A stretch of DNA of 64,000 nt from Octopus sinensis. Lineage: Eukaryota. The notes beneath the pieces were generated by a model that was not told the origin of the DNA, did not search any database, and worked only from the letters and a program-made list of their open reading frames with translations. The stretch lies in the NCBI RefSeq assembly GCF_006345805.1, contig NC_043003.1:101184001-101248000 (forward strand). Direction: 5' to 3'. Position numbers and translations under genes: made by a program. Shown here piece by piece: positions 1 to 45,706 of the stretch; position 1 is the first letter of the stretch; every line of letters begins with the position of its first letter.

Positions 1-440
1 TGTGGTTTCAATTGCGAAACAGGCAGTATGGAAGACGAGGATGAAAGGGGTGATAGCAGGCAACTTCATCTCTGGTTCTAGTCTGGTGGAATATTTTAAA
101 TTCCACCTAAAAAGACAAATAGAACAAGAGAGGAGGGGCCTGAGTAAGAAAGTGTTCGATGAAAGATGGAAGAATATTGTGAGTAAAAGGACCCTCATAA
201 ATGCGAGGTAAGCCGGAAAAAAAAGAAGGAAAAAAACCTAAGATCAGTGTCGTGGCGGGGTTTGTGGGGTCCGTAAGCCCGCCCCACTCCATCTGTGAAA
301 TTGCTTGTGTAAAAAATGTCCTATCATCCGAATTATATATTGATTTGTAAATTTTTAATAGACCCCAACGCATATTCATGTAAAATCATTTGTGATGTTC
401 TGTCTTTATATGTATAACCGTATGGTGAATAAAGAAATAA
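1..440 (+). mobile_element. Tx1/L1-clade LINE 3' end (ORF2 C-terminus plus 3' UTR)
   Basis: ORF 2-211 (YFKFHLKRQIEQERRGLSKKVFDERW) aligns by eye with the C-terminus of the Tx1 copy near 17270 (FFNYHLSSKIRLEKRCLSRDMFAKR); AATAAA near 428. Confidence 0.7.
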
Positions 441-529
441 GAGCTAACAATTCCAGTCTGTTATATATTTTGAGTATTGTTATCACTAGCGATATCAAGA
501 TATAACTTTGTATTTTGTATTTTATGTGT

Positions 530-815
530 AGATGTATATATATAGATGTACATGTAATATGTACACATATATATACACATATATACATCCACTAGCACTA
601 TGACCCGGCAACGACGGGTCTTTAATGCTAGTATATGTATATATACATACACATATATACATATACATACATACATATATACATATGCATACATATATAA
701 TATATGTATATATACATACATACATATATACATACATACATATATACATATGCATACATATATAATATATGTATATATACATACATACATATATATATAT
801 ATATACTTATATTCT
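530..815. repeat. Compound (TA)n/(TACA)n microsatellite
   Basis: Seen directly; source of the Y/I/H/T-rich spurious ORFs. Confidence 0.95.
591..632. mobile_element. 42-bp Helitron-terminus-like palindrome
   Basis: ACTAGCA-ctat-GACCCG-gcaacga-CGGGTC-tttaa-TGCTAGT: a GC hairpin followed by CTAG on either strand; resembles the start of the element at 3498. Confidence 0.55.
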
Positions 816-834
816 CTTATGTTTCAACCTTGAG

Positions 835-2055
835 GTTGTGGCCATGTTGGGACACTGCCAGTGTAATCACCTTTCAATTGGCCAATTCTGTGTGATTGAT
901 TTTTGGTGAAGGAATGAGTTCAATACCATTGCCCTTTTCTTAGTTTCCTGCCCTAATATTGGTTCGTCTGAGATCTTGGATAACAAGAGGTCAAGATGTT
1001 TCTTGGAAACAACTACCACCACCCCATGGAGATTCCTCAGATGTTTTGGCAAGGCATTAAATAGCTGCAGGCCCTTGAATCCCAAGCAACAAATCACAAG
1101 TACATGGTTCTCACCTTAGATGAGACAGCTGGGACTTTTGGAACAGTGCAGTGACGTCCAATTCAAGGTCTGGTATAATTCTCAATTTCAAAGTATGGTG
1201 CCAGTTCCTCCAGTATCTTCCACACATATATGAATGCATATCTCTCCTGTCTTCACTCCTGGGAGGAGAGTCATAGCTCTCTTAGTCTCTCCCAATAGCT
1301 CAGCTATTCCATTGATGCAATCTTCCTCATGTAGCATCGCCGAACCACCTGAAGTGTAAGGTGACCACAGTTGAGAGCAGTAGTCCAGATGGCTGAGGAC
1401 AAATGTCCTCCATAGGACTAGCATAGTTTTCTGGTCCCTTCATCTGAAGGTTCCCAGAATCCATCCAGCCATTCGCTTGTACATTGCCCCCATTTTTGTG
1501 ATATGCATGTAAAACGAGGCATTGTTGCTTATATCAATCCCAAGATCATGCACCATATGTGATTCAAGGATTGCTGCTCCTTTTGGTCCAGAGTGTCATT
1601 GTTGTGACTTCTGACTACCAATTAGCTGGTAGCAGAGAGTTTGGAATTTGCCTGCATTAAATAGCATGTTGTTGTTCTCAGCCCATTTATACATGACATC
1701 TAGGTTTTTCTGTTGGCATCAGAAAGTTTCTTGACAGCTTGTGCTACTTTTGTGTCATTGGCATAGCTAGTAAATGTGGCTGTATGTGTAACTGATGCCA
1801 TGTCTGAAAGAACCACCATGAACAGCAGCAGCCACAATATAGTTCTTTGGCACATTCCACTTTCTATTACTGTCTCCGTTGAGGCAGCCCCATTCGCTGC
1901 TAGAGCCTGGCTTCTGTCTTTTAAGAAGTCATACAACCACTCTGAGTTTCCCACTTATGCTGAGTCTCCATAGTTTGTGACATATGATGCTATGACTAAC
2001 CTTATCAAAGGCCTTTGCAAAGTTGAGATATATCACATCCAGACTTGAGTGATTC
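835..2055 (-). mobile_element. Decayed CR1/L2-type LINE fragment (RT and C-terminus)
   Basis: Minus-strand peptides DVIYLNFAKAFDKVSH, TSYANDTK (YADD-like), FVLSHLDYCSQLWSPY and GLQLFNALPKHLR; many stops and frameshifts. Confidence 0.85.
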
Positions 2056-2180
2056 ATTAATTGTTTCAACACTCAGTCATAATATATACACAAACATACA
2101 AACATATATACATATATGTATACATACATACACATGTATATACACATACATACACACACACACACACACATATATATGTA

Positions 2181-3446
2181 TTGGGTTGGCAACTAAGTTC
2201 CTGCGGTTTTTTTAAATTTAAATTTTTTTTAAAGTTTAATCAAAAATAACAACTAATTAATCAATAATGTATTCACCCTTGTTGTTTACAACTTCATCCC
2301 AAATTTCAACATGATTTTTAATATCTCATTGGTGAAATTCACCCGATTTCAACTCGAAAAATTGATCCAACCAAGCTCTCAATTCTGCATTAGTACTGAA
2401 CGAAACTCCATGCATAGCATTTGAAAGAGATCAAAAGAGGTGGAAATCCACTAGTGCCAAATCAGGAGAGTACGGTGAGTGTGGCAGCACTTCCCAGCCA
2501 TGCATTTGAATGGCTTCTTTGGTCATATTGGCGATATGAGGTCGGGTGTTGTCATGCAGCAGAACTCCATGCTGTCGATTAGGTTTTTTTCTCTTGAATA
2601 GCTGTGTTGAGTTGTTCCATCTGTTGAACATAGAGTTCTGCATTGACCGCTTGGTTCTGTTCAAGCAATTTTCAATGGATAATCCCTTCCCAGTCCTACC
2701 ATACGCACAGCATCATTTTACATGGATGAAGATCTTGTTTCACGCTCGGTGCCGCTTGTTTACCAGGACTAAGCCATTCCTTACGCTGCTTCATATTGAT
2801 GTACAGGCACTATTTTTCGTCGCCAGTAACGATTCAGTAAAGAAATCGTTGCTTGTGTCCATGAGCGGTGACGAGCAAGCAAACCAGCTGAGATTTTTGT
2901 TCTTATCACTTAAAGCATGCGGAACCCATGCTCCATACTTCTGAACCTTTCCCATCGAGTGAAGATGCTTCTCTATAGCAGTGTGAGAACATTCCATTTT
3001 CTCTGCCAAATCCCTTGTTGTGTGACGAGATTTTTTGTGCAAAGGTTGGTTTAATTGCTCTTCATCGAACTCAACTGGATGGCCAGAACGAGGTGCAACT
3101 TTGAGGTCAAAATTTCCATTTTTGAACTTGGCATACCAATCACGAGCAGTTCTTTCAGCAATGTCACCCTCTCCATACACAACACAAATGTCACAAGTGG
3201 CTTTTGCGGCCTTAGAAACTTGGTTAAAAGCAAAAAGGAGGTGTCGAAAATGCTCGTTTTTCTTAACTTGACATTCCATTTTAATGATCTCAAAATAAAC
3301 AAAATTTAACTAAAATTAACTAGAAAAAAAAAAAGATTTGAAAATGACTCAAAAATAGAATTCTCGAAAAAAATAGATTCCAAAATTTAAAACACAATAA
3401 ATTCCAAAATTTAAAAAAAACCACAGGAACTTAGTTGCCAACACAA
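2181..3446 (-). mobile_element. Full-length mariner (DD34D) transposon, disrupted transposase
   Basis: TIRs TTGGGTTGGCAACTAAGTTCCTGCGG / CCACAGGAACTTAGTTGCCAACACAA, TA on both sides, 1266 bp; HTH N-terminus, WVPHAL, HDNTRPH and YSPDLA motifs in ORFs 2791-3279 and 2431-2664. Confidence 0.95.
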
Positions 3447-3497
3447 TACATATATACATACATACATATATACACAAACATATATATATATATATAT

Positions 3498-3876
3498 ACT
3501 AGCAGTATCGCCCGGCGTTGCTCAGGTTTGTAAGGGAAATAACTATAAAGCATTTTTAGAGAGTTATAGCCAAAAAATAGCAAAAAAATGGAAAAAAATG
3601 ATAGTAAATTTTTTTTTAGAGTTAAAAAAGGTGGAGTTGCGTCCCCTAGACGGTCTGTGGTTTGGGTTTCTGATTCTCGACCCCATGTCGAATTTATCGA
3701 TTTTTTTCAGAACTGGGGGAACTTTTCAAAATTTTCGCTGCGTTAGTTTTGAATTATGACATTGGGCTATGTGTGTGTCAAGTTTCATCAGAATCGGTTG
3801 AAAGCTGTGGTCAGAGTGAGGGTACGAGAAAACAGACACACAGAAAACGCACAGACAAACTGCCGTTTATATAGAT
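3498..3876 (+). mobile_element. Non-autonomous Helitron/Helentron-like element (HINE/Lep1 type)
   Basis: Starts ACTAGCAGTATCGCCCGGCGTTGCTCAGG; ends AAGTTTCATCAGAATCGG...ACAGACACACAGA...TTTATATAGAT, the typical HINE terminal layout; sits in (TA)n. Confidence 0.7.
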
Positions 3877-3913
3877 ATATATATATATATATATATATTT
3901 ATTATATAGAAGG

Positions 3914-3964
3914 AGCTTCTACAGGACTAGAACTGTTTCATTCAAGAGAAATCTTCAGGAAGCT
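3914..3964 (-). ncRNA. Type I hammerhead ribozyme motif (left palindrome arm)
   Basis: Exact reverse complement of the 7315-7365 motif. Confidence 0.85.
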
Positions 3965-5042
3965 AGTTAACAAGAATTGTATTGGCATTTATACATTTAG
4001 GCAGGTTTAACGGGGTGTTGGTGGGGGACTTTTTTGGGGGTAGGCATAGCGCAAAATATCATACTTGGGGGAGTGGTCAAGGAGTCAGTGTTAAATTAGA
4101 TAGAAGAATAAATAAAAAAATAAAAAATAAAAAATAAAATAAAAAAATAAAAAAACCTATATATAAAAAAAACCTATATATAAAAAAAAGGGGGAATAGA
4201 GTTTTAGGTAAATAAGGAGATTCTCACTTATACCTATGCACACATGTATACATACATACACACACATACAAACATATATGCATATACATACACACATACA
4301 TACACACACATATATATACATATATATACACTTACACATACACATACATATACATATCTACACATACACATATATGTATACATACACACACTCACATGCA
4401 TACACGTATACACACATGTATATATACACTCACGACCTCACATACATATACGCACAGAAAAATATATATACACATACACACACATACTCACATACACGCA
4501 TACACACACATATCCACACACACACACATGCACACACAGCACACTAGTCCCTATATACACATATATACACATACACACACATATACACACACATACATAC
4601 ATATACATACATGTATACATATACATATGTGTACCTATGCAAACCTACACATACACACATATATATACACATACAAATACAGACCCATTCCCTAATTTTA
4701 ATTTTATTATCTTCGTTTATTACTTTTGTTATCTTTGGCCGCTTGGTCACAAACATCTTGGCTATGACAGCCAGTCCATTTATCTGTCTACTGGAAAACA
4801 AGCACTCATTCACTCACGCACACTCTTTAGCACGTACTCTCACTCATTCGTACACTCATACACATACACGCACGCACGCGTTATATTCATACATACATCC
4901 ATCTACATACATTCACGTATATACACATACGTACGCGTACCTACAGATTTATGTCTACACTCTTAGAAGGCTAGTCTATATATATACACCAATAAATATA
5001 AATACACACACATACATATACACCTACATACAAATACATACA

Positions 5043-5087
<45 letters not shown>

Positions 5088-6211
5088 TCACATACATATA
5101 TACACATATATACACACACACATATATACACACACATACGCATACACACACATATACATATATATACACTACACGCACATACACATGTACATGCGTACCC
5201 ATACACACACACACACACGCGCGCATCCATATATACACATAAGTACACACATGCGTAAAAGTATACATATATCTATGCTTACACATACACACACACACAC
5301 GCGCCTCCTTATATTCATACTTACATGCATACTCAAAAAATAAGTAAATAGTAAAATATATATACGCGCAGTTATTCGTACATGCATACTCAAAAAATAA
5401 ATAATAAATATTAAGTATATGTACGTGCAGTTACCTATTATATAGACGGATACATACATATAAACTTACACACATATATATGTATATATATATATATATA
5501 CATATACATACATATATACACATACACATACACATACATATATACATACATATATATATACACACACACATACACATACATATATACATATATATACATA
5601 CTTACACACATGTACATATAAATACACACATAGATAACTTTACGTACCTACATAAAGTACGTAAAGTTATCTATGTGTGTATTTATATGTACATGTGTGT
5701 AAGTATGTATATATATGTATATATGTATGTGTATGTGTGTGTGTGTATATATATATGTATGTATATATGTATGTGTATGTGTATGTGTATATATGTATGT
5801 ATATGTATATATATATATATAATATATATGTGTGTAAGTTTATATGTATGTATCCGTCTATATAATAGGTAACTGCACGTACATATACTTAATATTTATT
5901 ATTTATTTTTTGAGTATGCATGTACGAATAACTGCGCGTATATATATTTTACTATTTACTTATTTTTTGAGTATGCATGTAAGTATGAATATAAGGAGGC
6001 GCGTGTGTGTGTGTGTATGTGTAAGCATAGATATATGTATACTTTTACGCATGTGTGTACTTATGTGTATATATGGATGCGCGCGTGTGTGTGTGTGTAT
6101 GGGTACGCATGTACATGTGTATGTGCGTGTAGTGTATATATATGTATATGTGTGTGTATGCGTATGTGTGTGTATATGTGTGTGTGTATATATGTGTATA
6201 TATGTATGTGA

Positions 6212-6245
<34 letters not shown>

Positions 6246-7314
6246 GCATGTATGTATTTGTATGTAGGTGTATATGTATGTGTGTGTATTTATATTTATT
6301 GGTGTATATATATAGACTAGCCTTCTAAGAGTGTAGACATAAATCTGTAGGTACGCGTACGTATGTGTATATACGTGAATGTATGTAGATGGATGTATGT
6401 ATGAATATAACGCGTGCGTGCGTGTATGTGTATGAGTGTACGAATGAGTGAGAGTACGTGCTAAAGAGTGTGCGTGAGTGAATGAGTGCTTGTTTTCCAG
6501 TAGACAGATAAATGGACTGGCTGTCATAGCCAAGATGTTTGTGACCAAGCGGCCAAAGATAACAAAAGTAATAAACGAAGATAATAAAATTAAAATTAGG
6601 GAATGGGTCTGTATTGTATGTGTATATATATGTGTGTATGTGTAGGTTTGCATAGGTACACATATGTATATGTATACATGTATGTATATGTATGTATGTG
6701 TGTGTATATGTGTGTGTATGTGTATATATGTGTATATAGGGACTAGTGTGCTGTGTGTGCATGTGTGTGGTGGATATGTGTGTGTATGCGTGTATGTGAG
6801 TATGTGTGTGTATGTGTATATATTTTTCTGTGCGTATATGTATGTGAGGTCGTGAGTGTATATATACATGTGTGTATACGTGTATGCATGTGAGTGTGTG
6901 TATGTATACATATATGTGTATGTGTAGATATGTATGTGTATGTGTAAGTGTATATATATGTATATATATGTGTGTGTATGTATGTGTGTATGTATATGTA
7001 TATATGTTTGTATGTGTGTGTATGTATGTATACATGTGTGCATAGGTATAAGTGAGAATCTCCTTATTTACCTAAAACTCTATTCCCCCTTTTTTTATAT
7101 ATAGGTTTTTTTTATATATAGGTTTTTTTTATTTTTTATTTTATTTTTTTATTTTTTATTTTTTTATTTATTCTTCTATCTAATTTAACACTGACTCCTT
7201 GACCACTCCCCCAAGTATGATATTTTGCGCTATGCCTACCCCCAAAAAAGTCCCCCACCAACACCCCGTTAAACCTGCCTAAATGTATAAATGCCAATAC
7301 AATTCTTGTTAACT

Positions 7315-7365
7315 AGCTTCCTGAAGATTTCTCTTGAATGAAACAGTTCTAGTCCTGTAGAAGCT
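7315..7365 (+). ncRNA. Type I hammerhead ribozyme motif (right palindrome arm)
   Basis: AGCTTC-CTGAAGA-tTTC tctt GAAt-GAAA-CAG ttctagtc CTG-TA-GAAGCT: 6-bp stem I, intact core, 4-bp stem III, GUA site at 7357-7359. Confidence 0.85.
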
Positions 7366-7637
7366 CCTTCTATATAATAAATTAATTTTACTCTGCTTTG
7401 TATTGAGTACCTTATTTACTGTGGTTAACCCTGAATCAACCCGGGACCTACATATATATATATATATATATATATACATACACACACACACACACACATA
7501 TATACAAATATACATACACACATACAAGTAAAAAGTTCATTATAGGCATGTATAAGATAAAAATCTTATATAAAACACTACTAACAATTATAAAAATGGA
7601 GAAGAGATGTTAAAATTTCAAATTAGAATTTAATTTC

Positions 7638-8511: not shown

Positions 8512-11500
8512 TATGCAGGTTGAACTTCTTAAGATCATTGTTTGCTTATGAATTCTGCCAAATGCGAGCTCTCTTTTCAGGTACATGACGCCACTGTCCC
8601 CCGCCCCAGGGTCTCTAGGGCCCATTCCTCCCACACTGTCAGAGTTGGCACTCTCAACGTCAGCACACTGAAAGGTAGGTCTGGTGAGATTGTTGAAATG
8701 CTTGAACATAGATGTGTTGATATGTGCTGCATCCAAGAAGTAAGGTGGAGAGGAGGTTCTGCTAGGTTCCTCACAGGCAAAGAACACAGGTACAAGATTT
8801 TCTGGGCAGGGAACACTGACGGGGTTGGGGGCATGGGTATACTTCTCGCTGAAAAATGGGTAGATAAGGTAATAGAGGTAATCAGAGTAAGTGACAGAAT
8901 ACTTAAGATTAGATTAGTGCTTCATCATGGATTAGCAACCATTATATCGGCCTATGCCCCTCAGCCAGGGCTACCCAATGGACAGAAAGACTGATTCTAT
9001 GACACCCTACTGCAGACTGCCTTGTCGACGAATGACAGAGATCTTCTCTTTGTGGCTGGTGACTTCAATGGTCACGTTGGATGACATGCTGGGGTCTTCC
9101 ATGGTGTACATAGAGGCTATGGTTATGGTTCCCGCAACAAGGAGGGAACCAGGCTGCTGGAGTTCTGCGATGCAAATGATCTTATGGTTTGCAACACTAA
9201 CTTCAGGAAACCTACCAGCCACCTAGTCACCTACCGATCGGGCCGACATACCAGCCAAATTGATTACATCCTTGCCAGGAAAAGGGAAAGATGGCTGCTT
9301 ATAAATGCCAAAACCTTCCCAGGCGAAGAATGTACCCCACAACATAGACTGGTAGTTAGTGACTTTAGGATCAGGACTAAGAGGACGACCTGAAGACGAC
9401 CAACATGGAGAAGAAGGATCTGGAAACCTAAAGATCCTGCGAATGGACAGAGACTTAGGGACATATTACTTGAAGCCTTTGATGAAGTAGAAGGGGATAT
9501 AGCTTCACATGGGGTAGAAGACAACTGGAGGTCTCTAAGAGACCAGATCTGTGGCTGGTGCAAAGTCCCCTCTCGACCCAAAATAACGTGGTGGTGGAAC
9601 AATGTCATAGACAGGGCTATTAGAGAAAAGAGACAGGCTTGAAAGAACTGGAAAAATGGTGGTAGCAGGGAATTGTATCAAACTACCAAAAGAGAAGCTA
9701 GGAAACAGGTTTATTTAGCCAGAGGGGAAGCAGATAAGAAAAAATTTGCCAATGTTCTGCGCCGAGACGACCAAAGACTTGAGGTATTCCATGTTGCAAG
9801 ACAGTGTGTGAGAGAGAATCGTGATGTGGTAGGAGAGAAATGTGTTCGCATGGATGATGGCTCACTTGCGCTGAATGAGGATGCAAAGAGAGAGGTTTGG
9901 AAACACCATTATGAGAGGCTGCTAAATAAGGAAAATGAATAGGATAAAGAGAGTCTGTCGAATGTCAACTCAACAGAGGGACTAGCTATCTAAGTTGACA
10001 GTTCCTCAGTAGTTAAGGCAATTAGAAGCATGAAGACAGGGAAAGCCCCAGGCCCACCAGGAATTACTGCAGAGATGCTCAAAATATCTGGTAGTGTCAG
10101 CTATAGCCTAGTCACCTGTATAGTTAACCAGGTGATACACGAAGGAGTCATACCCAATGACTGGTGTAGCAGCATAATAGTCAACTGCTACAAAGGTAAA
10201 GGTAACGCTTTAGATACAAATAATTACAGAGGTATCAAGCTGTTGGATCAGGTAATGAAGGTTACGGAGAGGGTCATAGCCCAACTGATTAGGGAGAGAG
10301 TCAGCTTCAATGAGATGCAGTTTGGTTTCGTGCCAGGGAAAAGCACTACTGATGCCATATTTCTGGTGAAACAGCTGCAGGAGAAATACCTAGCCAAAGA
10401 TAAGCCTCTGTACCTGGCTTTCGTTGACATGGAGAAAGCCTTTGACAGGGTCCCCCGATCCCTTATCTGGTGGTCAATGAGGAAACTAGGGATAGATGAA
10501 TGGTTAGTGAGAGCTGTGCAAGCCATGTACAGAGACGCTGTAAGTAAGGTGAGGGTTGGCAACGAGTACACTAAAGAATACAGGGTAGACGTAGAAGTCC
10601 ACCAAGGTTCAGTTCTCAGCCCCCTCCTATTTATCATAGTCCTCCAGGCAATAACGGAGAAATTCAAGACAGGATGCCCCTGGGAGCTCCTATATGCTGA
10701 TGACCTTGCTCTAATTACTGAGTCACTATCAGAACTAGAGGCAAAGTTTCAAGTGTGGAGACAAGAATTAGAATTGAAGAGCCTTAAAATCAACCTAGCT
10801 AAAACCAAAGTCCTAATATGTAGGAAGGCAAGCAAATCACAAATGCCTTCAGGTAGATGGCCCTGCACGATCTGTAGAAAAGGCGTAGGTAGAAACTCTA
10901 TAAGATGCACCAAGTGTAAGCTATGGACACATAAGAGGTGCAGCAATGTCAAAGGAAGGCTAACTGGGAAGATAGTTTTTGTATGTGGCAGATGCTCAGG
11001 AGCAATAAACACTGAAAATGCTCAGAGACCAACTTCCGCCACATTCCAGGGAGAAAAACTAGAAATTGTTGATAGCTTCCGTTACCTAGGTGACCAAGTC
11101 AGTAGTGGGGGCAGGTGTGCAGAAAGGGTAACTGCTAGAGTAAGAATAGCCTGGGCAAAGTTCAGAGAGCTGGTGACAAAGGGCCACACCCTAGTGGTTG
11201 AGGGAATCTGTGGAATAGGTAGACCCAGGAAGACCTGGGATGAGGTGGTAAAGCACGACCTTCAAACATTAGGCTGGTGACAAAAGGCCTCTCGCTCAGA
11301 ATAAAAGGCAGACTGTATGACGCATGTGTATGAACAGCCATGCTACATGGCAGTGAAACTTGGACCGTGACTGCTGAGGATATGCGTAAGCTCGCAAGAA
11401 ATGAATCCAGTATGCGCCAATGGATGTGTAATGTCAGTGTTCATACTCGACAGAGTGTAAGTACCTTGAGAGAAAAGTTGGACCTAAGAAGCATCAGTTG

Positions 11501-11895
11501 TGGTGTGCAAGAGAGACGTTTGCACTGGTATGGTCATGTAGCGAGAATGGATGAAGATAGTTGTGTAAAAAAGTGCCACATCCTAGCGGTTGAGGGAACC
11601 TGTGGAAGAGGTAGACCCAGGAAAACCTGGGACGAGGTGGTGAAGCACGACCTTCGAACTTTAGGTCTCACCGAGGAAATGACCAGAGACCAAGACCTTT
11701 GGAAGTATGCTGTGCATGGGAAGACCCGGCAGGACAAGTGAGACCATAACCCGTGGCCTCTACCTGGGACGTAGCCAGCCCATTTATGCATATCTTTCCT
11801 TCTTGTGACACAAACCCTACTTGTGAAGACCTGTTGAGGCAAATGAAAATCAAAATCAAAATCAAAATCAAAATCGATCAACATCAATGGAAATT
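8512..11895 (+). mobile_element. RTE-clade LINE copy 1 (APE, RT, PHD), disrupted
   Basis: TLNVSTLKG, CIQEVRW, GDFNG and QIDYIL (APE); FVDMEKAFDRVPR, QGSVLSP and LYADD (RT); stops at 8992, 9391 and 9940; (AAATC)n after the ORF. Confidence 0.95.
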
Positions 11896-11904
11896 GTAGC
11901 TGTT

Positions 11905-13000
11905 TGGTTAATAATTCCATATGGTAATCAGATCAAATCCAACCTCCCTTACCAGTTACATAAAGCTACAGAAAAGGATTTCCCAAGAAATTCAAGATAC
12001 TATTCGATTATTAATTCACACTGAATCAGGATAGGTTTTTCTAACACAAAAAATCCTTTACAAATCATCTCTTCGCATAATAATAAGTAGATAAATACAA
12101 ATCCACTTAGTGAAAATACTAACATTAATTTTGTTAACACTAACCATTCTTTACATAATAATAACAGTGGGGTTACTGTTTCTGAAGTTGACTCCAATCA
12201 CATTTGTTTTCTTAGCAGTAATTCTAAGACTAGAAACTCTATTTATCAGTATAAAATTATTTCCAGTCTGACATCTTTTTTTATATAGGTAGTTATTCAT
12301 CTCAGTTGTCCAAAAGAATATCCAATCATTACTCTACATTTAGGCATATCAATAAATGTAACAATACCGGGCTTAGTAAATCAAACTGGTATCTAAAGGA
12401 TCATAAACAATTTGATTTGAAATGGAATATTCTCTCTGTATCTTTTCCATATAATAAAGGTAAATCTTTTTGTCCACTTTGTAACAATGAAATGTACTTT
12501 ATCCTGTTCTCAGAGAATCCCCTTGTAAACACGTTTATAGAGCATGTTTATTGTTGCAAACATTGGCAGAAACATACCTTTAGTTCCTATAAATGATTTC
12601 TACCATTCTATAAAATTCGCCCTTTGACTGTCTTCTTACATTGCACTTCCACTTAATATATCGACTTACATGCCTTTAAGTTTTATTCTTATTCACCTTT
12701 CACTCTATATCTCTCCACTATTAGTTTTCAGCTAATTTCTTTCTTTCTCCACCTTCTCTTTCTATAAACTACCATGACGTATCTATTAATGTATTTTTAA
12801 AAAAACTTGCTAGCATTCCCTTCATCATATACACAGACATCACATTCTGTTACAATGTCTTATTGATGTGTTTGGTTTCTTTCTTTCCCTGATAAGAAGA
12901 TTGCATTGTTTTACACCATTTTATTCCTTCTGGAATAATACCAATATTTTCTCCAAAACATATGTTGGAAGTAAAAAGATTTAAATAACACCTGCGTTTA
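11905..13000 (+). mobile_element. Decayed Penelope-like element 3' part (GIY-YIG C-terminus and 3' UTR)
   Basis: ORF 12306-12596 (NNTGLSKSNWYLK...LKWNIL...CPLCNNE) parallels the PLE ORFs at 27520 and 39867. Confidence 0.75.
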
Positions 13001-13084
13001 ACTCTATTTATTTATTTACTTACACACACACACGAACACATATATATGCATACATACATATATATAGGCAAAAAAAAAAAATAT

Positions 13085-16000
13085 TATAGGCTTCCCGTTT
13101 TTGGGATAACAAATTCTTGGTGTGAAAAATTTATTTTAACCATTGTAGGCTCTATTGTGACATCCACCCGTAGCACGGGCGAGATTTGAACTGTTGTTGT
13201 CGTGTAAATATAGGTTTTTGGGGATTTCATTGTGCTGGAAAATAACTTCAAATCGTCGTAGACTTTGTTGCTACATTTCACACCCCAACGGGGGTGGGAT
13301 TTGAACCTGGGACTGTGAGCATTTAAAAATTAATTACTTTTGTCCTCTGTGAGAGGAAAATTTCTTTTTTCGAAAGGTCTCCCAGTTTTGTGGGAAACCA
13401 ATTACTTTTCAACCATGTCGGTTGAAATAATACATGAAAAATCTACTCTTGAAGAGAGCAATGTTGATGTTGGCAATTGCGCCAACGCTGTTAAAAAGTT
13501 TTCGGCAGTCGCCGAAGTAGCAACCGAAAATATAGATATCTCTGCAGACATGCTGCAGGGATATTTTAAAAGAATGAAGGAGGAGGGAGGTGATGTTGTG
13601 ATATCGCCCTCCTCCACCGTGCTAGAAACGGAAAAGAGGACCGTGGTGTTTAAAACCTTCTGCCCACAAGACAAAAGGTTAAAGCACTTTGGGAAGGAAA
13701 CCATTGAAAAATGCCTGGCCCCGATATGGAGGGATATAGTGTATATCTCGAGGGGATGGGCATACGGATCCGTTGAAGTTCAATTCTCAGAGGAAAAGGT
13801 GGCTCGCGGGCACTCCATGTGCCCCCTGAAGACCAAGGAAGTGGTACTTTTGCCAACGTACATGGGGCGACGAACATCCCATGTAAGGATTAATGAAATC
13901 CCACCCACAGTAGACCCGAAAGAAGTGGTGGCCGGCCTGTTGTTTAATAGGACGGACCGGATAAACATATTACAGACCACAAGTTCCGCCCCACAGATGT
14001 GGTTAGGGCGGAACATAACGGTTTTAATACAAGGCAAACAGGAGGACATTCAGGCCCTACCAGAGAGAGTACTTGTTGGGGAGAATGTGGCCCTTAGGGT
14101 ACATGTGGAAGGCCGTAAGCCCACCTGTTACCATTACGGAAAAAAGGGCCACATTCGAGCTGACTGTGAAGAAAAAAAAAGTTGTTGCACACACCAGGCC
14201 CCTCAAATAACCAAAAAAACCCGCCCCCTCAAACACACCAACCCCCACAAACACAGAAACTCCCACCCCCATTGTTGAGGTGCTAGTCCCCAAACAAAGC
14301 ACAGAAAAACCCAGCCCCGGCATGCACAAGTCCCTACATAAACAAAATGACCCAACCCCCTTGGAAGACACGGCACCAACGGAAAACACTGCACCGAAAG
14401 AAACTGCCACCAACCCCTCAGACCATGTGTACCATGGAGGTTTCAGAGGGTGGATTCACACCAGTGGGAAAGAAACATTTCCGTAGACCTTTCCCCACCC
14501 ATATCCCCCACACAAAACAGAAAAAACGCACCACAGACAACAAAAAAGAAACCCTGCCCATCTGTCCCGGAAGAAAACAAAAATACTATGTTAATAGAAT
14601 ACGATACGACAGACACATATACAAATGACGCCATTGTAAAACACAAAAAGACTATGCTGTACACGCAACAACATGAGTGCAATGGTAGAAGAACCCCTAT
14701 ACCGGGAACTAAAGGACAGAAACCAGAAGGCCATATGGAAGATTGTGGATTTACCGAATTACGCGAAGAGAGAGGAGAAGAAGGGGACGGATCCACGTGT
14801 GGTGAGGTCATCCCCAACATCTCCAAAGAAATGTAAGTAGAACCTTTACTTTTTGTAATGGCGTCTCTTAACCTTGGTTGTTTGAATGTGCGTGGTCTGA
14901 GTTCGAAGTGGAAGCAGGCGTGTTTCCTCGACGATCTCAGATCACATGTTTGCATGTGATGGTTGCTACAGAGACCAAGCTGGACAGTCTACAAACCTTC
15001 TCGCCTCTCCTGAATGGCTACGAGAAAATCATGTCTCCCGGTCAGACCGGAGGACGAGGGGGCGTAGTGGTACTGATCCGTAAAAGCTTGGCTCTGCAGA
15101 TAAGTACAGTCTATGTGGACCCTGAAGGTGGGCTGGTCGTCCTTGATGTGACATACAGCAGTAAGGCCTTCAGGTTGATCGGACTCTATGCACCTTGTGC
15201 TAGAGGCTTCCAAACTGATTTTTATCAGCGCCTAGAGAACTTTCTCGTGACGTTGAAGACTTTTGTAGTATTAGGAGACTTTAATGCTATCGTTGACATA
15301 CACATCGATAGTGTTGGCTCGATCAATAGGAAAGTGAACTCACGTCTCGTGGACCTGCTTAAGCTGGCAGATTGTTACAGACTTGACCATCCCAACGTCC
15401 CAGAGTGGACCTGGACGAGTGGCGACGGAAGGTTCAAGTCTTATCTAGACAGGATAGTGATAAGAACTAGAGATAAGTCTAGTTTTAGTTGTCCACAGCT
15501 TGTCCAGGTACCCTATACGGACCATAGAATGGTCAAGTGTAGACTGGACATAGATAGCACACTAAAGATAGGAAACGGCTACTGGAAGCTGAACAAGTCT
15601 ATTTTGACTTGTGAGGCATACTGCAGTCGGATTAAGGAGTTAGTGCAGAGGGCGTTAACCAGAGCCATGGTTAATAACCGGTGGTGGTTCGCCCTGAAAA
15701 GAGCCATTCGATTCGAGTCCATTAGGTTTAGTAAGCAACTAAGACTAGATAGGGCTAGAATAGAAGGGCAATTAGCAAAGAAGTTAGAGGAGGCGTTGAG
15801 GTTGGGCTATGCATCTCACATTTTGGCGGCAAGAACGGCATTAGACCGTCACCTCAAAACCAAACATGAGGGGTGTAGAGTCTGGGCTAAAGTACGAACA
15901 TTGGGCCACGAGGGATCGAGTGTTCAGTTCGTCAGGGGTGTCCCCTGTCCCCTCTTCTATATGTGTTGGCTCTTGAGCCTTTGCTACGGAAATTGGAGGC

Positions 16001-17592
16001 AATAGGGGGTGCACCGCATGATCTATGGTGTGGAAGAGGAGCTACGGCGTACGCAGATGACATCTCCATCACCGTGGCAGATGAGGACCAGCTTCCAGTG
16101 GTGGAAGGGGCCATCAAAAGCTACGAGGCGGTGGCAGGAGCAAAGGTGAACAAGGACAAGTCGGTCGGTTTGCAACTCGGCACCTGGAGGGGCAAGCCGA
16201 TGCCGTCCAATAACGTCGTGGGGCGTTGGACGGAAGGTCCTGTTAAGCTGCTCGGAGTCTGGTTCGGGCCAGATCTCCAGATAGAGAAAAATTGGAATGA
16301 GGTGGCCGGCAAGGTGACCGCTCTAAACCAGACCTGGTCTGGACGGGCGTTATCCCTGCTAGGGAGGGCGGAGGTGGTGCAGATGTTCATAGCATCAGTA
16401 GTCACCTACCGCCTGACCGTGGTGCCTTGCCCCGATTTGTGGATGAACAAGTTGGAGAGAATCCTTTTCCACTTTTTGTGGAAAGGAGGGAAGCCACTTG
16501 TAAAGCGCTCTGTCTGCTGCCAGAAACCGCTAAAGGGTGGGCTAGGGATGCCTTGGCTGAAGATGCGAAAGGTCGCGTGAAGGTTGAGGCACCTCTGGCT
16601 TTACTTGGATGGCGAACAGGTGTGGTCACCGCATGTTCGGTTCTACCATCCGCGATTAACGTCCTTAACGGACATTGGTAATTGGATCAAGCAGAGACCT
16701 AGGCTTGGGGACTGGCAATTGGAATGCCATCAGGCACTTCAGCTACTCTCTCGGGCGGGCAATGCCGGCAACAGGAGTTCCACCGCGGATTTCTATAGCG
16801 GGTTAGTGGAGGTTAAGTCCGAAGACGCCTTGGGGGAGACCCTGGGCTACGATGAAAATCAGTTGACCAACCTGTTCCGGAGAACGTTCGGGCCGGGGTA
16901 CCTGGATAATTACTAGAAATCCCTGGCCTGGCAGTGTTTCTGTGCGGCGTTACCTGTTCGCGACAAGCTGTCAAGGCACAGAAGTGCCGTCTCGCCGACA
17001 TGTCCGCGATGTGAGCAGGATAGGGAAACCATCTTGCACGCATTCGTGGAGTGTCCGGAGTTATCGGCACTGATTGCTTTCGCCAAACAACTGTTGTCAG
17101 TGAATGGCAGAGTACAGCTATCAGCGGAGTCTATCATTGAGATTGTGCCACCTACCTTCCTCAGCAGGGAAAGGAAGGCTTGTTTTTCCTGCGTAGTAGG
17201 AAGACGCGTACGAAAGGTATAGTGACAGATACCTTTGTATCCGGCCAGGGGTTGGTCAAATTTTTCAATTACCACCTCAGTAGCAAGATCAGGCTGGAGA
17301 AGAGGTGTCTGTCACGAGATATGTTTGCGAAAAGATGAAAGTCTGTAGCGTGCAAGCTGGGTATATCTGGCACCAGGTAAGCATGGCCGGATCAAGAAGT
17401 AAAGGTTCTACCCGGATGGCATGGATCCGTGCCCTACTGTATAATACCAAATTTTAAAAACTTTATATTGTAAATATTATATATATTTTATTGTAATCAC
17501 CAATATTTTAAGCTACTACACCCTATATGTTTGTCTGTATTTGTATGTTCCCTCTATGTAACGCCTTAATGGCGAATCTTTCATGAAATAAA
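13085..17592 (+). mobile_element. Tx1/L1-clade LINE with an internal ORF2 deletion
   Basis: ORF2 starts MASLNLGCLNVRGL near 14858; APE motifs ATETKL, LGDFNA, SYLDRI and TDHR; a jump near 15915 to VRQGCPLSPL; AYADD; CPRCEQDRETILHAFVEC zinc finger; AATAAA near 17587. The 5' boundary is uncertain. Confidence 0.9.
13340..14836 (+). pseudogene. Tx1/L1 ORF1 (gag-like), frameshifted
   Basis: ORF 13340-14278 has a degenerate zinc knuckle CYHYGKKGHIRADC, followed by low-complexity P/T/K-rich pieces up to 14836. Confidence 0.8.
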
Positions 17593-18177
17593 GTAGCTTG
17601 CTTATGAACCACATGGTCCCGGGTTCAGTCCCACTGCGTGTCACCTTGGGCAAGTGTCTTCTACTATAGCCTCAGATCGAACAAAGCTTTGTGAGTGGAT
17701 TTGGTAGATGGAAACTGAAAGAAGCCCATCGTATATATGTATATATATATATATATGTGTGTGTATGTATATATATCATCATCATCATTTAGCGTCCGCT
17801 TTCCATGCTAGCATGGGTTGGACGGTTCAGCTGGGGTCTGTGAAGCCAGAAGGCTGCATCAGGCCCAGTCTGATCTGGCAGTGTTTCTACGGCTGGATGC
17901 CCTTCCTAACGCCATATAAATACACACACATATATATATATATACATATATATGTATGTGTGTATATGTTTGTGTGTCTGTGTTTGTTCCCCCACCATCG
18001 CTTGACAACCGATGCTGGTATCTTTACGTCCCCGTAACTTAGTGGTTTGGCAAAAGGGAGCGGTAGAATAAGTACTAGGCTTACAAAGAATATGTCTTGG
18101 GGTCGATTTGCTCGACTAAAAAAGGCGATGCTCCAGCATGGCCACAGTCAAATGACTGAAACAAGTAAAAGAGTAAA
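17591..18177 (+). mobile_element. tRNA-derived octopus SINE, 5'-clipped and interrupted
   Basis: B box GGGTTCAGTCCC; central TA/TG tract; tail GCTCCAGCATGGCCACAGTCAAATGACTGAAACAAGTAAAAGAG; same family as 53430-53772. Confidence 0.85.
17775..17914 (-). mobile_element. RTE 3'-tail fragment with (GAT)n nested in the SINE
   Basis: Reverse complement of the AACCCATGCTAGCATGGAAAGCGGACG...GATGATGAT tail that ends RTE copies 2 and 3. Confidence 0.85.
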
Positions 18178-18285
18178 TACATATACATACATATATATAT
18201 ATACATACATAATATACATACATATATATACACACACACATACACATAGATATATACATATATATTACACATACATATACATAGA

Positions 18286-19040
18286 TAATTATGCTACACA
18301 AATCCCAAAAGAATATTTTTCTCCCTCGAGTTCTAACCACTACCCCCTCTCTCTCTCTTGGCCTAACTCTGTTTGTCTGTCTCTCTCTCTCTCTTTCGAT
18401 TACCACTCGCTTCGCCAAGACTTCCTCCACCACCACCACCACCACCCTATATAAACTAGCACATGCACTCGGATTCACTACTCGCTTTCAATACCTCTGA
18501 AGAATACGAATCCCAGAAGATGCTCAGATAAGAAGTTTTGTCATTTCAACCTCATTCATCTACTCTTCTATTTCTGCACAGATCATAAACTCCTTATTAG
18601 TTCTTTTCATTATTCTGTCTATTTCCGTACCATGTCATCATGTAAATATAGTTTCAATAGTTTCATCTTCCTCGTTGTTGCCTTAAGATAACCTTAGTTC
18701 ACACATTTCCTTAGCCGCAACATATTCATTCATTCATCTATTAAAGTTTATCACACAGTCACTTATTTCTCTAATTTTGTCTTAGATTGGTTCTCAGATT
18801 TTTCAATTCTATTTTACTATTATCAACATTTGCTGTCTTGGTAAATTATGCCACACGAATCCCAAAAGAATATTTTTCTCCTTCGTGTTCTGACCACTAC
18901 CTCCTCTCTCTCTCTCTCGATCGATTACCACTCGCTTCGCCAAGACTTCCACCACCACCCTATATAAACTAGTGCACACACTCGGATTCCCCAACTCGAT
19001 TTTTTTTTATATATACCTCCACCAAAAGAATATGTATCCA
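18286..19040 (+). repeat. Two diverged copies of a roughly 200-bp segment (about 18286-18500 and 18842-19040)
   Basis: Shared TAA(A)TTATGC..CAC.AATCCCAAAAGAATATTTTTCTCC...TCGATTACCACTCGCTTCGCCAAGACTTCC...CCCTATATAAACTAG...CACTCGGATTC. Confidence 0.85.
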
Positions 19041-19071
19041 GAAGAAGCTCTCGTCTAAATTTGCTAGTTCA

Positions 19072-43330: not shown

Positions 43331-43419
43331 ATATATTATGTATTGTAAAATTTTATTTAAAATTGTTAAATTAAATTTTTCCCTGTATGTTTTGGAATTA
43401 TATTCCCAACTATTATTAC

Positions 43420-44695
<1,276 letters not shown>

Positions 44696-44861
44696 TTTGT
44701 TGTGCAAGATTTTTTATGTGAAGTCGTGTGTTGAAACAGATATTGTTATATTTCAGAATGGTCATATTGCCAGTTTAGCCAATAAAAACACATGCACTAT
44801 ATATTTGGTGTTATTTTGCTTCATTGTTATTTATTTTTTACATTAATCTTAATCTTATTTC

Positions 44862-44906
44862 GGCCAGAGTTCTTTCATCACACTCCTGTGACCGCATCAG
44901 TGGTCC
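44862..44906 (-). ncRNA. Hammerhead-like motif, A9C variant (left arm)
   Basis: Exact reverse complement of 45707-45751. Confidence 0.6.
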
Positions 44907-45315
44907 TTTGTTTTCTTCTTTCTTATTTGTGTCTCTCCTTACTAACCGTCAGCCATTTTGTATTTCTATTGTATGTCTTCATTTGCGCATGCTTATATCT
45001 CTATGTGCGTTTATGTTTATTTAGTGTATGTGAGGGGATGCCTCTAATATTTGTATCTTCTGTTTATATATGTTCATGTAATTTGTATTTTGTTTTTGTT
45101 GTTTTTGTTTATTCTTATTTTGTTCATGTGTTTACATCAACTTATTATTATCATTACATATGCTTGTATGTATAACAACAATACTAGTAATAATAATAAT
45201 AAATCGAATTGAAAAAAAAAAAATATATATATATATATATAAAAAAATTTTTAAATAAAAAATAAATAAAAATAATAAATTTCAAAAAAAATATCTACAT
45301 ATATATATATATATA

Positions 45316-45350
<35 letters not shown>

Positions 45351-45706
45351 GTATATATATATACATATATATAGCCACTTATTTCTATTAGTTTATTTAT
45401 CTGTATATTTATTATGTTTTCAGGATCCTCTATTGTCATATGTTGTGGTGTGTGCTAGTGCTCCATTCTAGTTTTCTATTCAGGCTAAGTTTATTTTCTA
45501 TTATGTGTGTAGCTTCTGTAATACAAATTACATGAACATATATAAACAGAAGATACAAATATTAGAGGCATCCCCCCACATACACACACTAAATAAACAT
45601 AAATGCACATAGAGATATAAGCATGCGCAAATGAAGACATACAATAGAAATACAAAATGGCTGACGGTTAGTAAGGAGAGACACAAATAAGAAAGAAGAA
45701 AACAAA

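What the first reader, a model, noticed from the sequence alone, without database searches (positions are those of the whole stretch)
3897..7382. 3.5-kb non-coding palindrome capped at both ends by outward-facing hammerhead ribozymes
Seen: 1.75-kb and 1.73-kb arms fold around a 9-nt spacer. The arms carry no recognisable ORF and are mostly microsatellite. Each ends in a complete HHR motif (3914-3964 minus, 7315-7365 plus). The left copy stops about 17 nt past the HHR at a (TA)n tract; the right copy has about 85 nt of tail before its own (TA)n. Established: Penelope-like elements carry HHRs in their pLTRs and form inverted 5' structures. Inference: this is a non-autonomous, PLE-mobilised unit duplicated by fold-back priming. 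A read-through transcript would form about 1.7 kb of dsRNA, a strong ADAR/Dicer substrate in a cephalopod, in which each ribozyme is sequestered by its own antisense. Caveat: arm differences look like 1-2 bp long-read indels, so an assembly fold-back artefact is possible.
Basis: partly seen in the sequence, partly recalled or inferred. Interest (0 to 1): 0.9.

Follow-up and report, generated by a model that had tools for sequence, protein, structure and literature searches.

The report
Penelope-style palindromic insertion, weak hammerhead-like ends
A 3.5-kb non-coding DNA palindrome that sits between two (TA)n tracts and carries an imperfect hammerhead-ribozyme-like motif near each outer end has the layout that Penelope-like retroelements leave behind, so it is probably a dead, head-to-head retro-insertion, a known kind of structure rather than a new one.

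Summary
The palindrome is real in the sequence. Its arms are 3897-5647 and 5657-7382, with a 9-nt spacer and 98.1% gapped identity. Every arm difference lies in microsatellite or homopolymer sequence, and about 880 nt of unique sequence is identical. The "complete hammerhead" claim is only partly right. All core nucleotides, a 6-bp helix I and a 4-bp helix III are present. Helix II has only 3 weak pairs plus a U.U mismatch at positions 10.1/11.1, Rfam gives no match, and the hammerhead fold is not the minimum-energy fold.

The architecture is Penelope-like. I fetched seven real Penelope-like loci. Each carries a minimal hammerhead just after its GIY-YIG reading frame, and three of six long loci are head-to-head inverted copies. 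One has 1.35-kb arms, a 15-nt spacer and outward hammerheads. 3' ends abut a (TA)n tract in one locus and an (ATA)n tract in another.

The finding's arms, however, hold no Penelope coding remnant and resemble no fetched element. No second copy appeared in the window or in the few collections that could be searched. Its motif is also of a different type from the reference hammerheads.

Best reading (about 0.5): a snap-back, Penelope-type retro-insertion of a non-coding RNA into a (TA)n tract. A DNA-level inverted duplication and an assembly artefact remain open. The dsRNA/ADAR idea and the cephalopod origin are untested.

The parts
3875..3898 (.). Left flanking (TA)12 microsatellite, taken as one half of the putative target tract
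   Evidence: Perfect (TA)n tract. TRF array 3868-3908.
3897..5647 (-). Left arm (1751 nt). It is the shorter copy in element terms: it lacks the last ~70 nt of the 3' tail. The sense of its hammerhead-like motif is the minus strand.
   Evidence: 98.1% gapped identity to the reverse complement of 5657-7382.
3914..3964 (-). Hammerhead-like motif, left copy, identical to the right copy
   Evidence: Descriptor scan. No Rfam match.
5648..5656 (.). 9-nt spacer CTACATAAA at the centre. The innermost 4 nt of each arm are GTAC, which is self-complementary and could serve as microhomology for fold-back priming.
   Evidence: pair I9/I14, 9 nt between the arms. The GTAC reading comes directly from the sequence.
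5657..7382 (+). Right arm (1726 nt). The sense of its hammerhead-like motif is the plus strand.
7315..7365 (+). Hammerhead-like motif: AGCUUC / CUGAAGA / UUUC-UCUU-GAAU / GAAA / CAG-UUCUAGUC-CUG / U A / GAAGCU. Predicted cleavage would fall between 7359 and 7360.
   Evidence: One search gives the helices (I = 6 bp, II = 3 bp plus a U.U mismatch, III = 4 bp). One search gives 0 of 300 shuffles. One search gives no Rfam match. One search shows the hammerhead fold is not the minimum-energy fold.
7383..7451 (+). Unique 69-nt tail present only at the right end, between the end of arm identity and the (AT)n tract
   Evidence: sequence. (no other copy in the window). Penelope insertions often carry a one-sided 30-40 bp tail (PMC8557442).
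7452..7476 (.). Right flanking (AT)12 microsatellite, followed by (AC)n; taken as the other half of the putative target tract
4686..4976 (.). Unique core island of the arm (mirror copy about 6315-6605), 100% identical between the arms
   Evidence: no differences. (only low-complexity matches elsewhere in the window). (no protein-level relatives).
4108..4189 (.). A-rich (AAAAAAT)n and 17-nt repeat block (mirror copy 7090-7172, T-rich on the plus strand). It lies between the unique 3'-terminal ~210 nt and the CA/TA microsatellite body.
5322..5433 (.). 57-nt tandem duplication inside the arm (mirror copy 5870-5981)

Best explanation
The locus is a dead-on-arrival, Penelope-type retro-insertion.

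Proposed steps (inferred unless marked otherwise):
1. A roughly 1.8-kb non-coding RNA, with plus-strand sense running 5657 to 7451, carried a hammerhead-like motif about 90 nt from its 3' end.
2. It was reverse-transcribed from a nick in a (TA)n microsatellite.
3. At the 5' end of the template, the cDNA 3' end folded back on a GTAC microhomology, leaving a 9-nt loop, and copied itself.
4. Copying stopped about 70 nt short of the end.
5. Joining to the other half of the (TA)n tract and second-strand synthesis turned the hairpin strand into a duplex palindrome.

The template was either a rare non-autonomous element with a Penelope-like 3' end, or a read-through transcript that carried microsatellite-rich genomic sequence upstream of a solo 3' end.

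Shown: the palindrome, the spacer, the motif and its position and orientation, both (TA)n flanks, the one-sided tail, and the match of this layout to real Penelope loci.
Inferred: the RNA intermediate, the enzyme, the snap-back step, and any ribozyme activity. Activity is probably weak or absent given helix II. In a palindrome each transcript holds one sense copy and one antisense copy, so the tandem pairing that Penelope and retrozyme hammerheads need cannot form.
For: Geometry of the finding:
- Equal arms and a 9-nt spacer.
- The motif lies in the outward (3') orientation, 17 nt and 86 nt from the (TA)n tracts.
- (TA)>=10 tracts cover about 1% of the window. Being at one on the left and within 80 nt of one on the right has a chance of roughly 0.012 x 0.047.

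Reference loci (L001-L007, the seven loci fetched via relatives of the window's GIY-YIG ORF):
- All seven have a minimal hammerhead 0-110 nt after the ORF stop.
- L001 is a palindrome with 1351-nt arms, 99.5% identity, a 15-nt spacer and outward hammerheads about 85 nt from the outer ends. Its right end abuts an (ATA)n tract.
- L002 and L003 are head-to-head copies with 100%-identical arms of about 1 kb.
- L006 has two hammerhead-bearing 3' ends facing each other across a (TA)28 tract, about 170 nt and about 9 nt from it.

Literature:
- Inverted 5'-truncated copies, a one-sided tail, a (TA)n target bias and hammerheads near the 3' end are described in PMC8557442.
- Hammerheads on opposite strands 100-700 bp apart are described in PMC4209133.

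Chance of the motif: the rate is about 1e-7 per nt per strand at the loosest setting.
Against: - No Penelope coding remnant lies upstream of the motif. The best tblastn E-value inside the arms is 0.96 and Pfam finds nothing. In all seven references the ORF stop lies within about 110 nt of the hammerhead.
- The arms have no similarity to the window's own GIY-YIG element or to L001-L007.
- No second copy was found.
- The motif differs from the reference hammerheads. Those have a GC-rich helix II with a bulged G and a palindromic A-NNNN-U in place of helix III. The finding has an AU-rich 3-bp helix II with a U.U mismatch and a 4-bp helix III with an 8-nt loop.
- About 59% of the body is microsatellite of the kind common elsewhere in the window, as expected for ordinary intergenic DNA.
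- The tail is 69 nt, against the 30-40 bp described.
Confidence: 0.5

Rival explanations
1. This is a DNA-level inverted duplication of ordinary microsatellite-rich intergenic DNA. A replication fork or break at the hairpin-prone (TA)n tract led to a template switch onto the opposite strand. About 1.73 kb was copied in reverse, and synthesis switched back at the GTAC microhomology. The hammerhead-like motif is a coincidence.
For: - No other copy and no transposon protein similarity were found.
- The arm composition is typical of the window's microsatellite blocks.
- The left boundary lies exactly at a (TA)n tract.
- The innermost arm bases are GTAC.
- The motif has a defective helix II, no Rfam match and an unfavoured fold.
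Against: - The hammerhead-like motif (0 of 300 shuffles) would have to fall by chance within about 20-90 nt of the arm end, in the outward orientation.
- The second (AT)n tract 70 nt beyond the right arm would also be a coincidence, with a chance of about 5%.
- The full layout matches real Penelope palindromes.
Confidence: 0.17
2. The palindrome is an assembly artefact. Only one arm exists in the genome, and a fold-back chimeric long read, or a mis-join inside AT-rich repeats, created the second arm. The arm differences are consensus errors.
For: - All arm differences are indels or shifts in microsatellites and A-runs, and the unique sequence has no substitution.
- In contrast, the other inverted repeat in the window has 6 substitutions in 350 nt, and the L001 reference palindrome has 6 substitutions in 1351 nt.
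- From general knowledge, kilobase palindromes with spacers under 10 nt are unstable in cells.
Against: - The same arm end is joined to two unrelated unique flanks. The left flank 1-3896 matches nothing to the right of 7383, and the 69-nt tail is on one side only. A single fold-back read, which would be palindromic to its ends, cannot produce this. Two independent chimeric junctions would be needed.
- Eleven microsatellite length changes with one substitution or none is also what a young real duplication would show, because microsatellites mutate far faster than single bases (general knowledge).
- Real short-spacer Penelope palindromes exist in other assemblies.
Confidence: 0.18
3. This is a Foldback-type DNA transposon, with long terminal inverted repeats built of simple repeats and almost no loop, inserted at a TA-rich site.
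For: The arms are long inverted repeats made largely of short tandem repeats, with a tiny central loop.
Against: - There is no unambiguous target-site duplication at 3896/7383.
- The arms are unequal at the outer end rather than the inner end.
- There are no other copies.
- There is no transposase.
- The internal repeats are cryptic CA/TA microsatellite, not ordered subrepeats.
Confidence: 0.05

Closest known systems
Head-to-head (inverted, 5'-truncated) insertions of Penelope-like elements, as described by Evgen'ev and Arkhipova 2005 and Craig et al. 2021 (PMC8557442) and as seen here in L001, L002 and L003
   Same: - Two inverted copies with their 5' ends at the centre and a very short spacer (9 nt here, 15 nt in L001).
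- A hammerhead-type motif in sense orientation near each outer 3' end.
- Ends in (TA)n microsatellite.
- An extra tail at one end only.
   Different: - No reverse transcriptase or GIY-YIG coding sequence anywhere in the arms.
- No pseudo-LTR or tandem part.
- The body is about 59% microsatellite.
- The motif is not the minimal, dimer-type Penelope hammerhead.
- No sequence similarity to any fetched Penelope element.
Type I hammerhead ribozymes of metazoan genomes (canonical type: helix I 6 bp, helix II 4 bp, short helix III; PMC4209133)
   Same: - All conserved core nucleotides are present.
- Open (type I) topology.
- Helix I is 6 bp.
- Helix II occupies 4 positions with a 4-nt loop.
- Loop 3 contains a palindrome (CUAG).
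   Different: - A U.U mismatch replaces G10.1-C11.1, leaving only 3 weak pairs in helix II.
- Helix III is longer (4 bp, 8-nt loop).
- There is no recognisable loop 1 for tertiary contacts.
- No Rfam model matches.
- The fold is not thermodynamically favoured.
Non-LTR retrozymes: tandem non-autonomous units with a type I hammerhead, derived from Penelope ends (PMC7229834; bioRxiv 10.64898/2026.07.22.740005)
   Same: A non-coding unit carrying a type-I-like hammerhead motif, possibly mobilised by Penelope machinery.
   Different: - Retrozymes are direct tandem repeats of roughly 170-400 nt, with a hammerhead in every unit, and they yield circular RNA.
- Here there are two inverted 1.75-kb copies, so no transcript carries two sense hammerheads.
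Fold-back inverted duplications made by DNA repair or replication template switching at short inverted repeats
   Same: A short spacer, a 4-nt self-complementary microhomology at the centre, and one boundary at a hairpin-prone (TA)n tract.
   Different: This mechanism does not predict a hammerhead-type motif near the outer end, nor (TA)n on both sides.

Membership tests
Hammerhead ribozyme (type I) | Conserved core: C3 U4 G5 A6 N7 G8 A9, G12 A13 A14, the A15.1-U16.1 pair, and H17 not G | tested here: met
   CUGAAGA ... GAAA ... U-A at 7321-7359.
Hammerhead ribozyme (type I) | Three helices around the core, with helix II closed by a G10.1-C11.1-type pair | tested here: not met
   Helix I is 6 bp and helix III is 4 bp. 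Helix II is only U-A, U-A, C-G, with U.U at 10.1/11.1. The minimum-energy fold does not form it, whereas four reference hammerheads do form theirs.
Hammerhead ribozyme (type I) | Match to a curated covariance model (the Rfam hammerhead families) | tested here: inconclusive
   No match at gathering score or at E<=10. However, Rfam at gathering score also missed the minimal hammerheads of L001 and L002.
Hammerhead ribozyme (type I) | Self-cleavage at the H17 site | not testable with these tools
   This needs in vitro transcription and a cleavage assay.
Penelope-like element (autonomous) | A single ORF with a reverse transcriptase and a GIY-YIG endonuclease | tested here: not met
   The arm ORFs have no Pfam family. 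tblastn with 27 GIY-YIG relatives gives a best E-value of 0.96 inside 3800-7500.
Penelope-like element (insertion architecture) | An inverted 5'-truncated copy adjacent head-to-head | tested here: met
   The same arrangement is seen in L001-L003. Described in PMC8557442.
Penelope-like element (insertion architecture) | A hammerhead near the 3' end, in sense orientation, within the terminal repeat | tested here: inconclusive
   The position and orientation fit: 17 and 86 nt from the flanks, against about 9 to 170 nt in the references. The motif type differs from the minimal Penelope hammerhead.
Penelope-like element (insertion architecture) | Insertion into a microsatellite, often (TA)n, with a one-sided tail | tested here: met
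   (TA)12 at 3875-3898 and (AT)12 at 7452-7476. The tail at 7383-7451 is on one side only, but at 69 nt it is longer than the 30-40 bp described.
Penelope-like element (insertion architecture) | Pseudo-LTR: a direct partial tandem copy | tested here: not met
   No long direct repeat of arm sequence exists in or near the locus.
Any transposable-element family | Several dispersed copies with different flanks | tested here: inconclusive
   No copy in the 64-kb window or in the protein and metagenome collections. The source genome itself could not be searched.
Non-LTR retrozyme | Direct tandem repeats, each unit with a type I hammerhead | tested here: not met
   The two motifs lie on opposite strands in inverted copies. 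There is no tandem unit.
Foldback DNA transposon | Target-site duplication and terminal sequences shared across copies | tested here: inconclusive
   No duplication at 3896/7383. If the tail is counted, both flanks are (TA)n, which is uninformative. No other copies are available.

The most novel reading that the evidence does not exclude
The arm is a copy of a so far undescribed non-autonomous element. It would be about 1.8 kb, non-coding and microsatellite-rich, with a monomer-type hammerhead variant (a stable helix III and a relaxed helix II) at its 3' end, and mobilised in trans by Penelope machinery. Its snap-back insertions would create kilobase perfect hairpins that, when transcribed, feed RNA-editing or small-RNA pathways.
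Probability: 0.12. Interest if true: 0.55.

Novelty: new member of a known kind. Interest (0 to 1): 0.3.

Why it matters
If the reading is right, this is one more example of the inverted head-to-head insertions that Penelope-like elements are known to make. It stands out because the copied unit has no coding sequence and because its hammerhead-like motif is not the usual minimal type. It would then be a small data point on how Penelope machinery handles non-autonomous or chimeric templates.

There is also a practical point for genome annotation. Short-spacer kilobase palindromes next to (TA)n tracts should be checked for Penelope hallmarks before being dismissed as long-read artefacts. In addition, Rfam at gathering score reported none of the hammerhead motifs in the two reference loci it was run on.

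The larger claims are a ribozyme-capped dsRNA source and an ADAR substrate. Both rest on untested transcription and on a motif whose helix II makes activity doubtful.

Tried and rejected
- Rfam at gathering score on the whole window, and at E<=10 on 3700-7600 and on 7285-7400. No hammerhead was found, only spurious miRNA-family hits on microsatellite and on the palindrome centre.
- Rfam around the window's GIY-YIG ORF and on L001 and L002. Nothing was found, which showed that Rfam misses minimal Penelope hammerheads.
- BLAST of each unique arm segment, the tail and the left flank against the window, with word sizes 9 and 7. Only self and mirror matches appeared.
- A suspected resemblance between the arm end and a G-rich island near the GIY-YIG ORF (62100-62290). 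The score was no better than shuffles, so I rejected it.
- Exact-protein look-ups of arm ORFs and of real window ORFs, to find the source assembly or independent assemblies. None was on record.
- Word-indexed protein searches with the arm-end peptide and the core peptide. Both found nothing.
- An exhaustive phmmer search with the 53-aa arm-end peptide. It gave one marginal hit at E = 8.5e-4 to a 1744-aa protein, which I treat as noise.
- A metagenome scan for a 24-mer of the motif. It gave 0 matches.
- A tRNA/SINE-head test with ARAGORN. It found 0 genes.
- tblastn with 27 GIY-YIG relatives against the arms. Only chance hits appeared.
- Organism identification. It failed: the best relatives of the GIY-YIG ORF are 46-47% identical and unnamed.
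Full report
**1. What is in the sequence**

The palindrome exists as described.
- The arms are 3897-5647 and 5657-7382, around the 9-nt spacer CTACATAAA.
- A global gapped alignment of the left arm with the reverse complement of the right arm gives 1720 matches, 3 mismatches and 31 gap columns in 11 indel events, which is 98.1% identity.
- Every difference lies in an A-run or a CA/TA-type microsatellite. The changes are 1-bp changes in A-runs, unit-length changes of 2, 3, 6 and 8 bp, one shifted T in an (A7T)n block, and one G/A change inside a microsatellite.
- Three stretches that contain the unique islands, 3897-4128, 4676-5045 and 5204-5481, are identical between the arms.
- Tandem-repeat arrays cover about 59% of an arm.
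- The reading frames that run through the arms are translations of microsatellite and have no Pfam family.
- The innermost four bases of each arm are GTAC, which is self-complementary. A 4-nt fold-back microhomology around a 9-nt loop is therefore possible (read directly).

**2. The hammerhead claim**

A descriptor scan found exactly one motif in the window, present in both arms at 7315-7365 (+) and 3914-3964 (-). It reads AGCUUC / CUGAAGA / UUUC-UCUU-GAAU / GAAA / CAG-UUCUAGUC-CUG / U-A / GAAGCU.

What is present:
- All conserved core nucleotides.
- Helix I of 6 bp.
- Helix III of 4 bp, counting A15.1-U16.1, with an 8-nt loop.

What is weak:
- Helix II is only U-A, U-A and C-G.
- It has a U.U mismatch at positions 10.1/11.1. 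From general knowledge of the ribozyme, natural hammerheads almost always have a G-C pair there.

Chance expectation:
- No dinucleotide shuffle of the window out of 300 reached this quality, and 5 of 300 reached a much looser version. The motif is therefore not expected by chance in 64 kb.
- Extrapolating those rates, a genome of a few gigabases would hold on the order of a hundred or more such chance motifs.

Other tests:
- Rfam gave no hammerhead match at the gathering score, at E<=10 over 3700-7600, or on a 116-nt piece.
- The isolated 51-mer has a minimum free energy of -8.5 kcal/mol (z = +0.17). It replaces helix II with an AAGA/UCUU pairing that uses core nucleotides.
- In an 83-nt context, the 3' strand of helix I is captured by a UAGAAG...CUUCUA hairpin.

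I therefore call it hammerhead-like, not a complete hammerhead.

**3. Surroundings**

- The left arm ends inside a (TA)12 tract (3875-3898).
- On the right, arm identity ends at 7382. A unique 69-nt tail follows, then an (AT)12 tract at 7452-7476 that runs into (AC)n.
- (TA)>=10 tracts cover about 1% of the window outside the locus. 1.2% of positions lie within 5 nt of one, and 4.7% lie within 80 nt. The bracketing by (TA)n is therefore not expected by chance, although microsatellites do cluster.
- The left flank 1-3896 has no similarity to anything to the right of 7383.
- The wider window is transposon-rich. It holds LINE-type reverse transcriptase and endonuclease frames at 10-21 kb and 34.5-36.5 kb, a mariner-type HTH frame at 2791-3279, and a GIY-YIG endonuclease frame at 62839-63582 on the minus strand.

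**4. Is the arm a repeat family?**

I found no evidence that it is.
- None of the unique arm segments, the tail or the left flank has another copy in the window.
- Exact look-ups of arm reading frames in the public assembly collection found nothing.
- Word-indexed protein searches with the arm-end peptide and the core peptide found nothing.
- An exhaustive HMMER search with the arm-end peptide gave one marginal hit, which I regard as noise.
- A metagenome scan for a 24-mer of the motif gave no match.

The source genome itself could not be searched. The organism could not be identified either, so the "cephalopod" statement is unverified.

**5. Real Penelope-like loci as a yardstick**

The GIY-YIG frame of the window has relatives at 34-51% identity. 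I fetched seven of their loci, L001-L007, from large eukaryotic contigs.

Hammerheads in the references:
- All seven carry a textbook minimal Penelope hammerhead 0-110 nt after the stop codon.
- Its parts are CUGANGA, a GC-rich helix II of 3-6 bp with a bulged 5' G and a GNRA-like loop, GAAA, a palindromic A-NNNN-U (AAUU, ACAUGU or AUAUAU) in place of helix III, and a short helix I.
- This matches the description by Cervera and de la Pena (PMC4209133).
- Rfam at gathering score missed them in L001 and L002. The Rfam negative in section 2 is therefore not decisive on its own.
- All four references that I folded form their helix II in the minimum-energy structure. The finding's motif does not.

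Head-to-head copies in the references:
- Three of the six long loci are head-to-head inverted copies.
- L001 has arms 3603-4953 and 4969-6320, with 99.5% identity (6 mismatches, 1 gap) and only 15 nt between the arms. Its hammerheads face outward about 85 nt inside each outer end, and the right end runs into an (ATA)n tract.
- L002 and L003 have 100%-identical arms of about 1 kb, with spacers of 1.25 kb and 1.03 kb.
- In L006, two hammerhead-bearing 3' ends face each other across a (TA)28 tract. One lies about 170 nt from the tract and the other about 9 nt.

These observations agree with the literature. It describes inverted 5'-truncated copies, a one-sided 30-40 bp tail, microsatellite target bias including (TA)n, and hammerheads near the 3' end (PMC8557442).

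**6. Comparison with the finding**

The finding shares the whole layout:
- a head-to-head palindrome with a very short spacer (9 nt, against 15 nt in L001);
- a hammerhead-type motif in sense orientation near each outer end;
- distances of 17 and 86 nt to the (TA)n tracts, inside the reference range of about 9-170 nt;
- (TA)n on both sides;
- an extra tail at one end only.

It differs in four ways:
- There is no Penelope coding remnant. In the references the stop codon lies within about 110 nt upstream of the hammerhead. Here 1.66 kb upstream is non-coding, the best tblastn E-value is 0.96, and Pfam finds nothing.
- It has no sequence similarity to the window's GIY-YIG element or to L001-L007.
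- The motif is of another type (section 2).
- The body is mostly microsatellite, of the kind common elsewhere in the window.

**7. Most likely mechanism (confidence about 0.5)**

I propose a Penelope-type, target-primed reverse transcription of a roughly 1.8-kb non-coding RNA.
- The RNA's sense is the plus strand, 5657 to 7451.
- Synthesis was primed at a nick in a (TA)n tract.
- At the template's 5' end the cDNA snapped back on GTAC and copied itself until about 70 nt before its own start.
- It was then joined to the other half of the (TA)n tract, and second-strand synthesis produced the duplex palindrome.

This accounts for the equal arms, the tiny spacer, the outward motifs, the shorter left arm, the one-sided tail and the (TA)n on both sides.

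The template may have been one of two things:
- a rare non-autonomous element;
- a read-through transcript carrying genomic microsatellite sequence upstream of a solo Penelope-like 3' end. This would explain why no second copy is seen.

All of these steps are inferred. What is shown is the anatomy and its match to real loci. The product is probably inert as a ribozyme source, because helix II is weak and because an inverted pair cannot place two sense hammerheads in one transcript.

**8. Rival explanations**

(a) DNA-level inverted duplication by template switching at the (TA)n tract (0.17).
- It explains the left boundary and the GTAC.
- It needs the motif and the second (AT)n tract to be coincidences.

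(b) Assembly artefact (0.18).
- For it: zero substitutions in unique sequence and only repeat-length differences. By contrast, the window's other inverted repeat has 6 substitutions in 350 nt, and L001 has 6 in 1351 nt.
- Against it: the same arm end is joined to two unrelated flanks, with a tail on one side only. One fold-back read cannot give this.
- The difference pattern is also what a young real duplication would show.

(c) Foldback-type DNA transposon (0.05).
- There is no clear target-site duplication, no family and no ordered subrepeats.

**9. The dsRNA/ADAR idea**

A transcript through both arms would certainly be self-complementary over about 1.7 kb. That follows. Nothing here shows transcription, editing or small RNAs, so the idea remains an untested inference.

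**10. Verdict**

The structure works like a Penelope-type head-to-head insertion. It cannot be filed as a Penelope element, because it has no ORF. It cannot be filed as a retrozyme, because it has no tandem units. Its status as a mobile family is unproven.

This is a known kind of structure, and interest is modest (0.3). Read mapping, a genome-wide census of the 3' end, an empty-site search and a cleavage assay would settle the open questions.

Noticed in passing
window 44740-45089 and 45520-45873: A second inverted repeat with 350-nt arms, 97.2% identity (6 substitutions and one 4-bp indel) and a 430-nt AT-rich, non-palindromic spacer. The right arm abuts an (AT)n tract at 45874. It looks like an older foldback or MITE-like element, or two inverted SINE-like copies. 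I used it only as a contrast for arm divergence.
   Followed up: partly
window 62839-63582 (-): A 247-aa ORF with a GIY-YIG domain. Its relatives (34-51% identity) are Penelope-type endonuclease ends followed by minimal hammerheads. The window copy has no intact CUGANGA...GAAA core downstream. It runs within about 150 nt into roughly 900 nt of CA/TA microsatellite, which ends near a (TA)n tract at 61657-61681. Any reverse transcriptase part would lie beyond the end of the window.
   Followed up: partly
L006 6847-7178: Two hammerhead-bearing Penelope 3' ends lie tail-to-tail across one (TA)28 tract (7066-7122). This is a clear example of repeated insertion into the same microsatellite.
   Followed up: partly
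L002 5951-6361: A 198-nt-arm palindrome (96% identity) with a 15-nt spacer lies immediately after a Penelope 3' end. The spacer length is the same as in the L001 Penelope palindrome, but no hammerhead core lies inside it. Its nature is unknown.
   Followed up: no
L001 and L002 (whole loci): Rfam at gathering score reports none of the Penelope minimal hammerheads that a simple core pattern finds. Genome scans that rely on Rfam alone will therefore undercount these ribozymes.
   Followed up: yes
window 10030-21222, 34494-36524 and 56284-57555: Several LINE-type fragments (RVT_1, Exo_endo_phos and a PHD-like finger). The copies at 10.3-11.2 kb and 21.0-21.5 kb are inverted relative to one at 56.3-57.6 kb, with 81-84% identity.
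   Followed up: no
window 2791-3279 (-): A 162-aa ORF with a Mos1-type HTH_48 domain. It is a mariner-family transposase fragment, about 600 nt left of the palindrome's flank.
   Followed up: no
window 3700-7600 and 61900-62700: CA/TA microsatellites and the palindrome centre give many sub-threshold Rfam hits to repeat-derived miRNA families (mir-297, mir-3149, mir-5014, mir-466). These are artefacts of simple sequence and hairpin shape, not miRNA genes.
   Followed up: yes
window 42000-46000: A block of very low G+C (18-22%) with dense (TA)n tracts at 43.4-44.6 kb. Many imperfect inverted matches among these tracts show that the locus is generally prone to forming hairpins.
   Followed up: no
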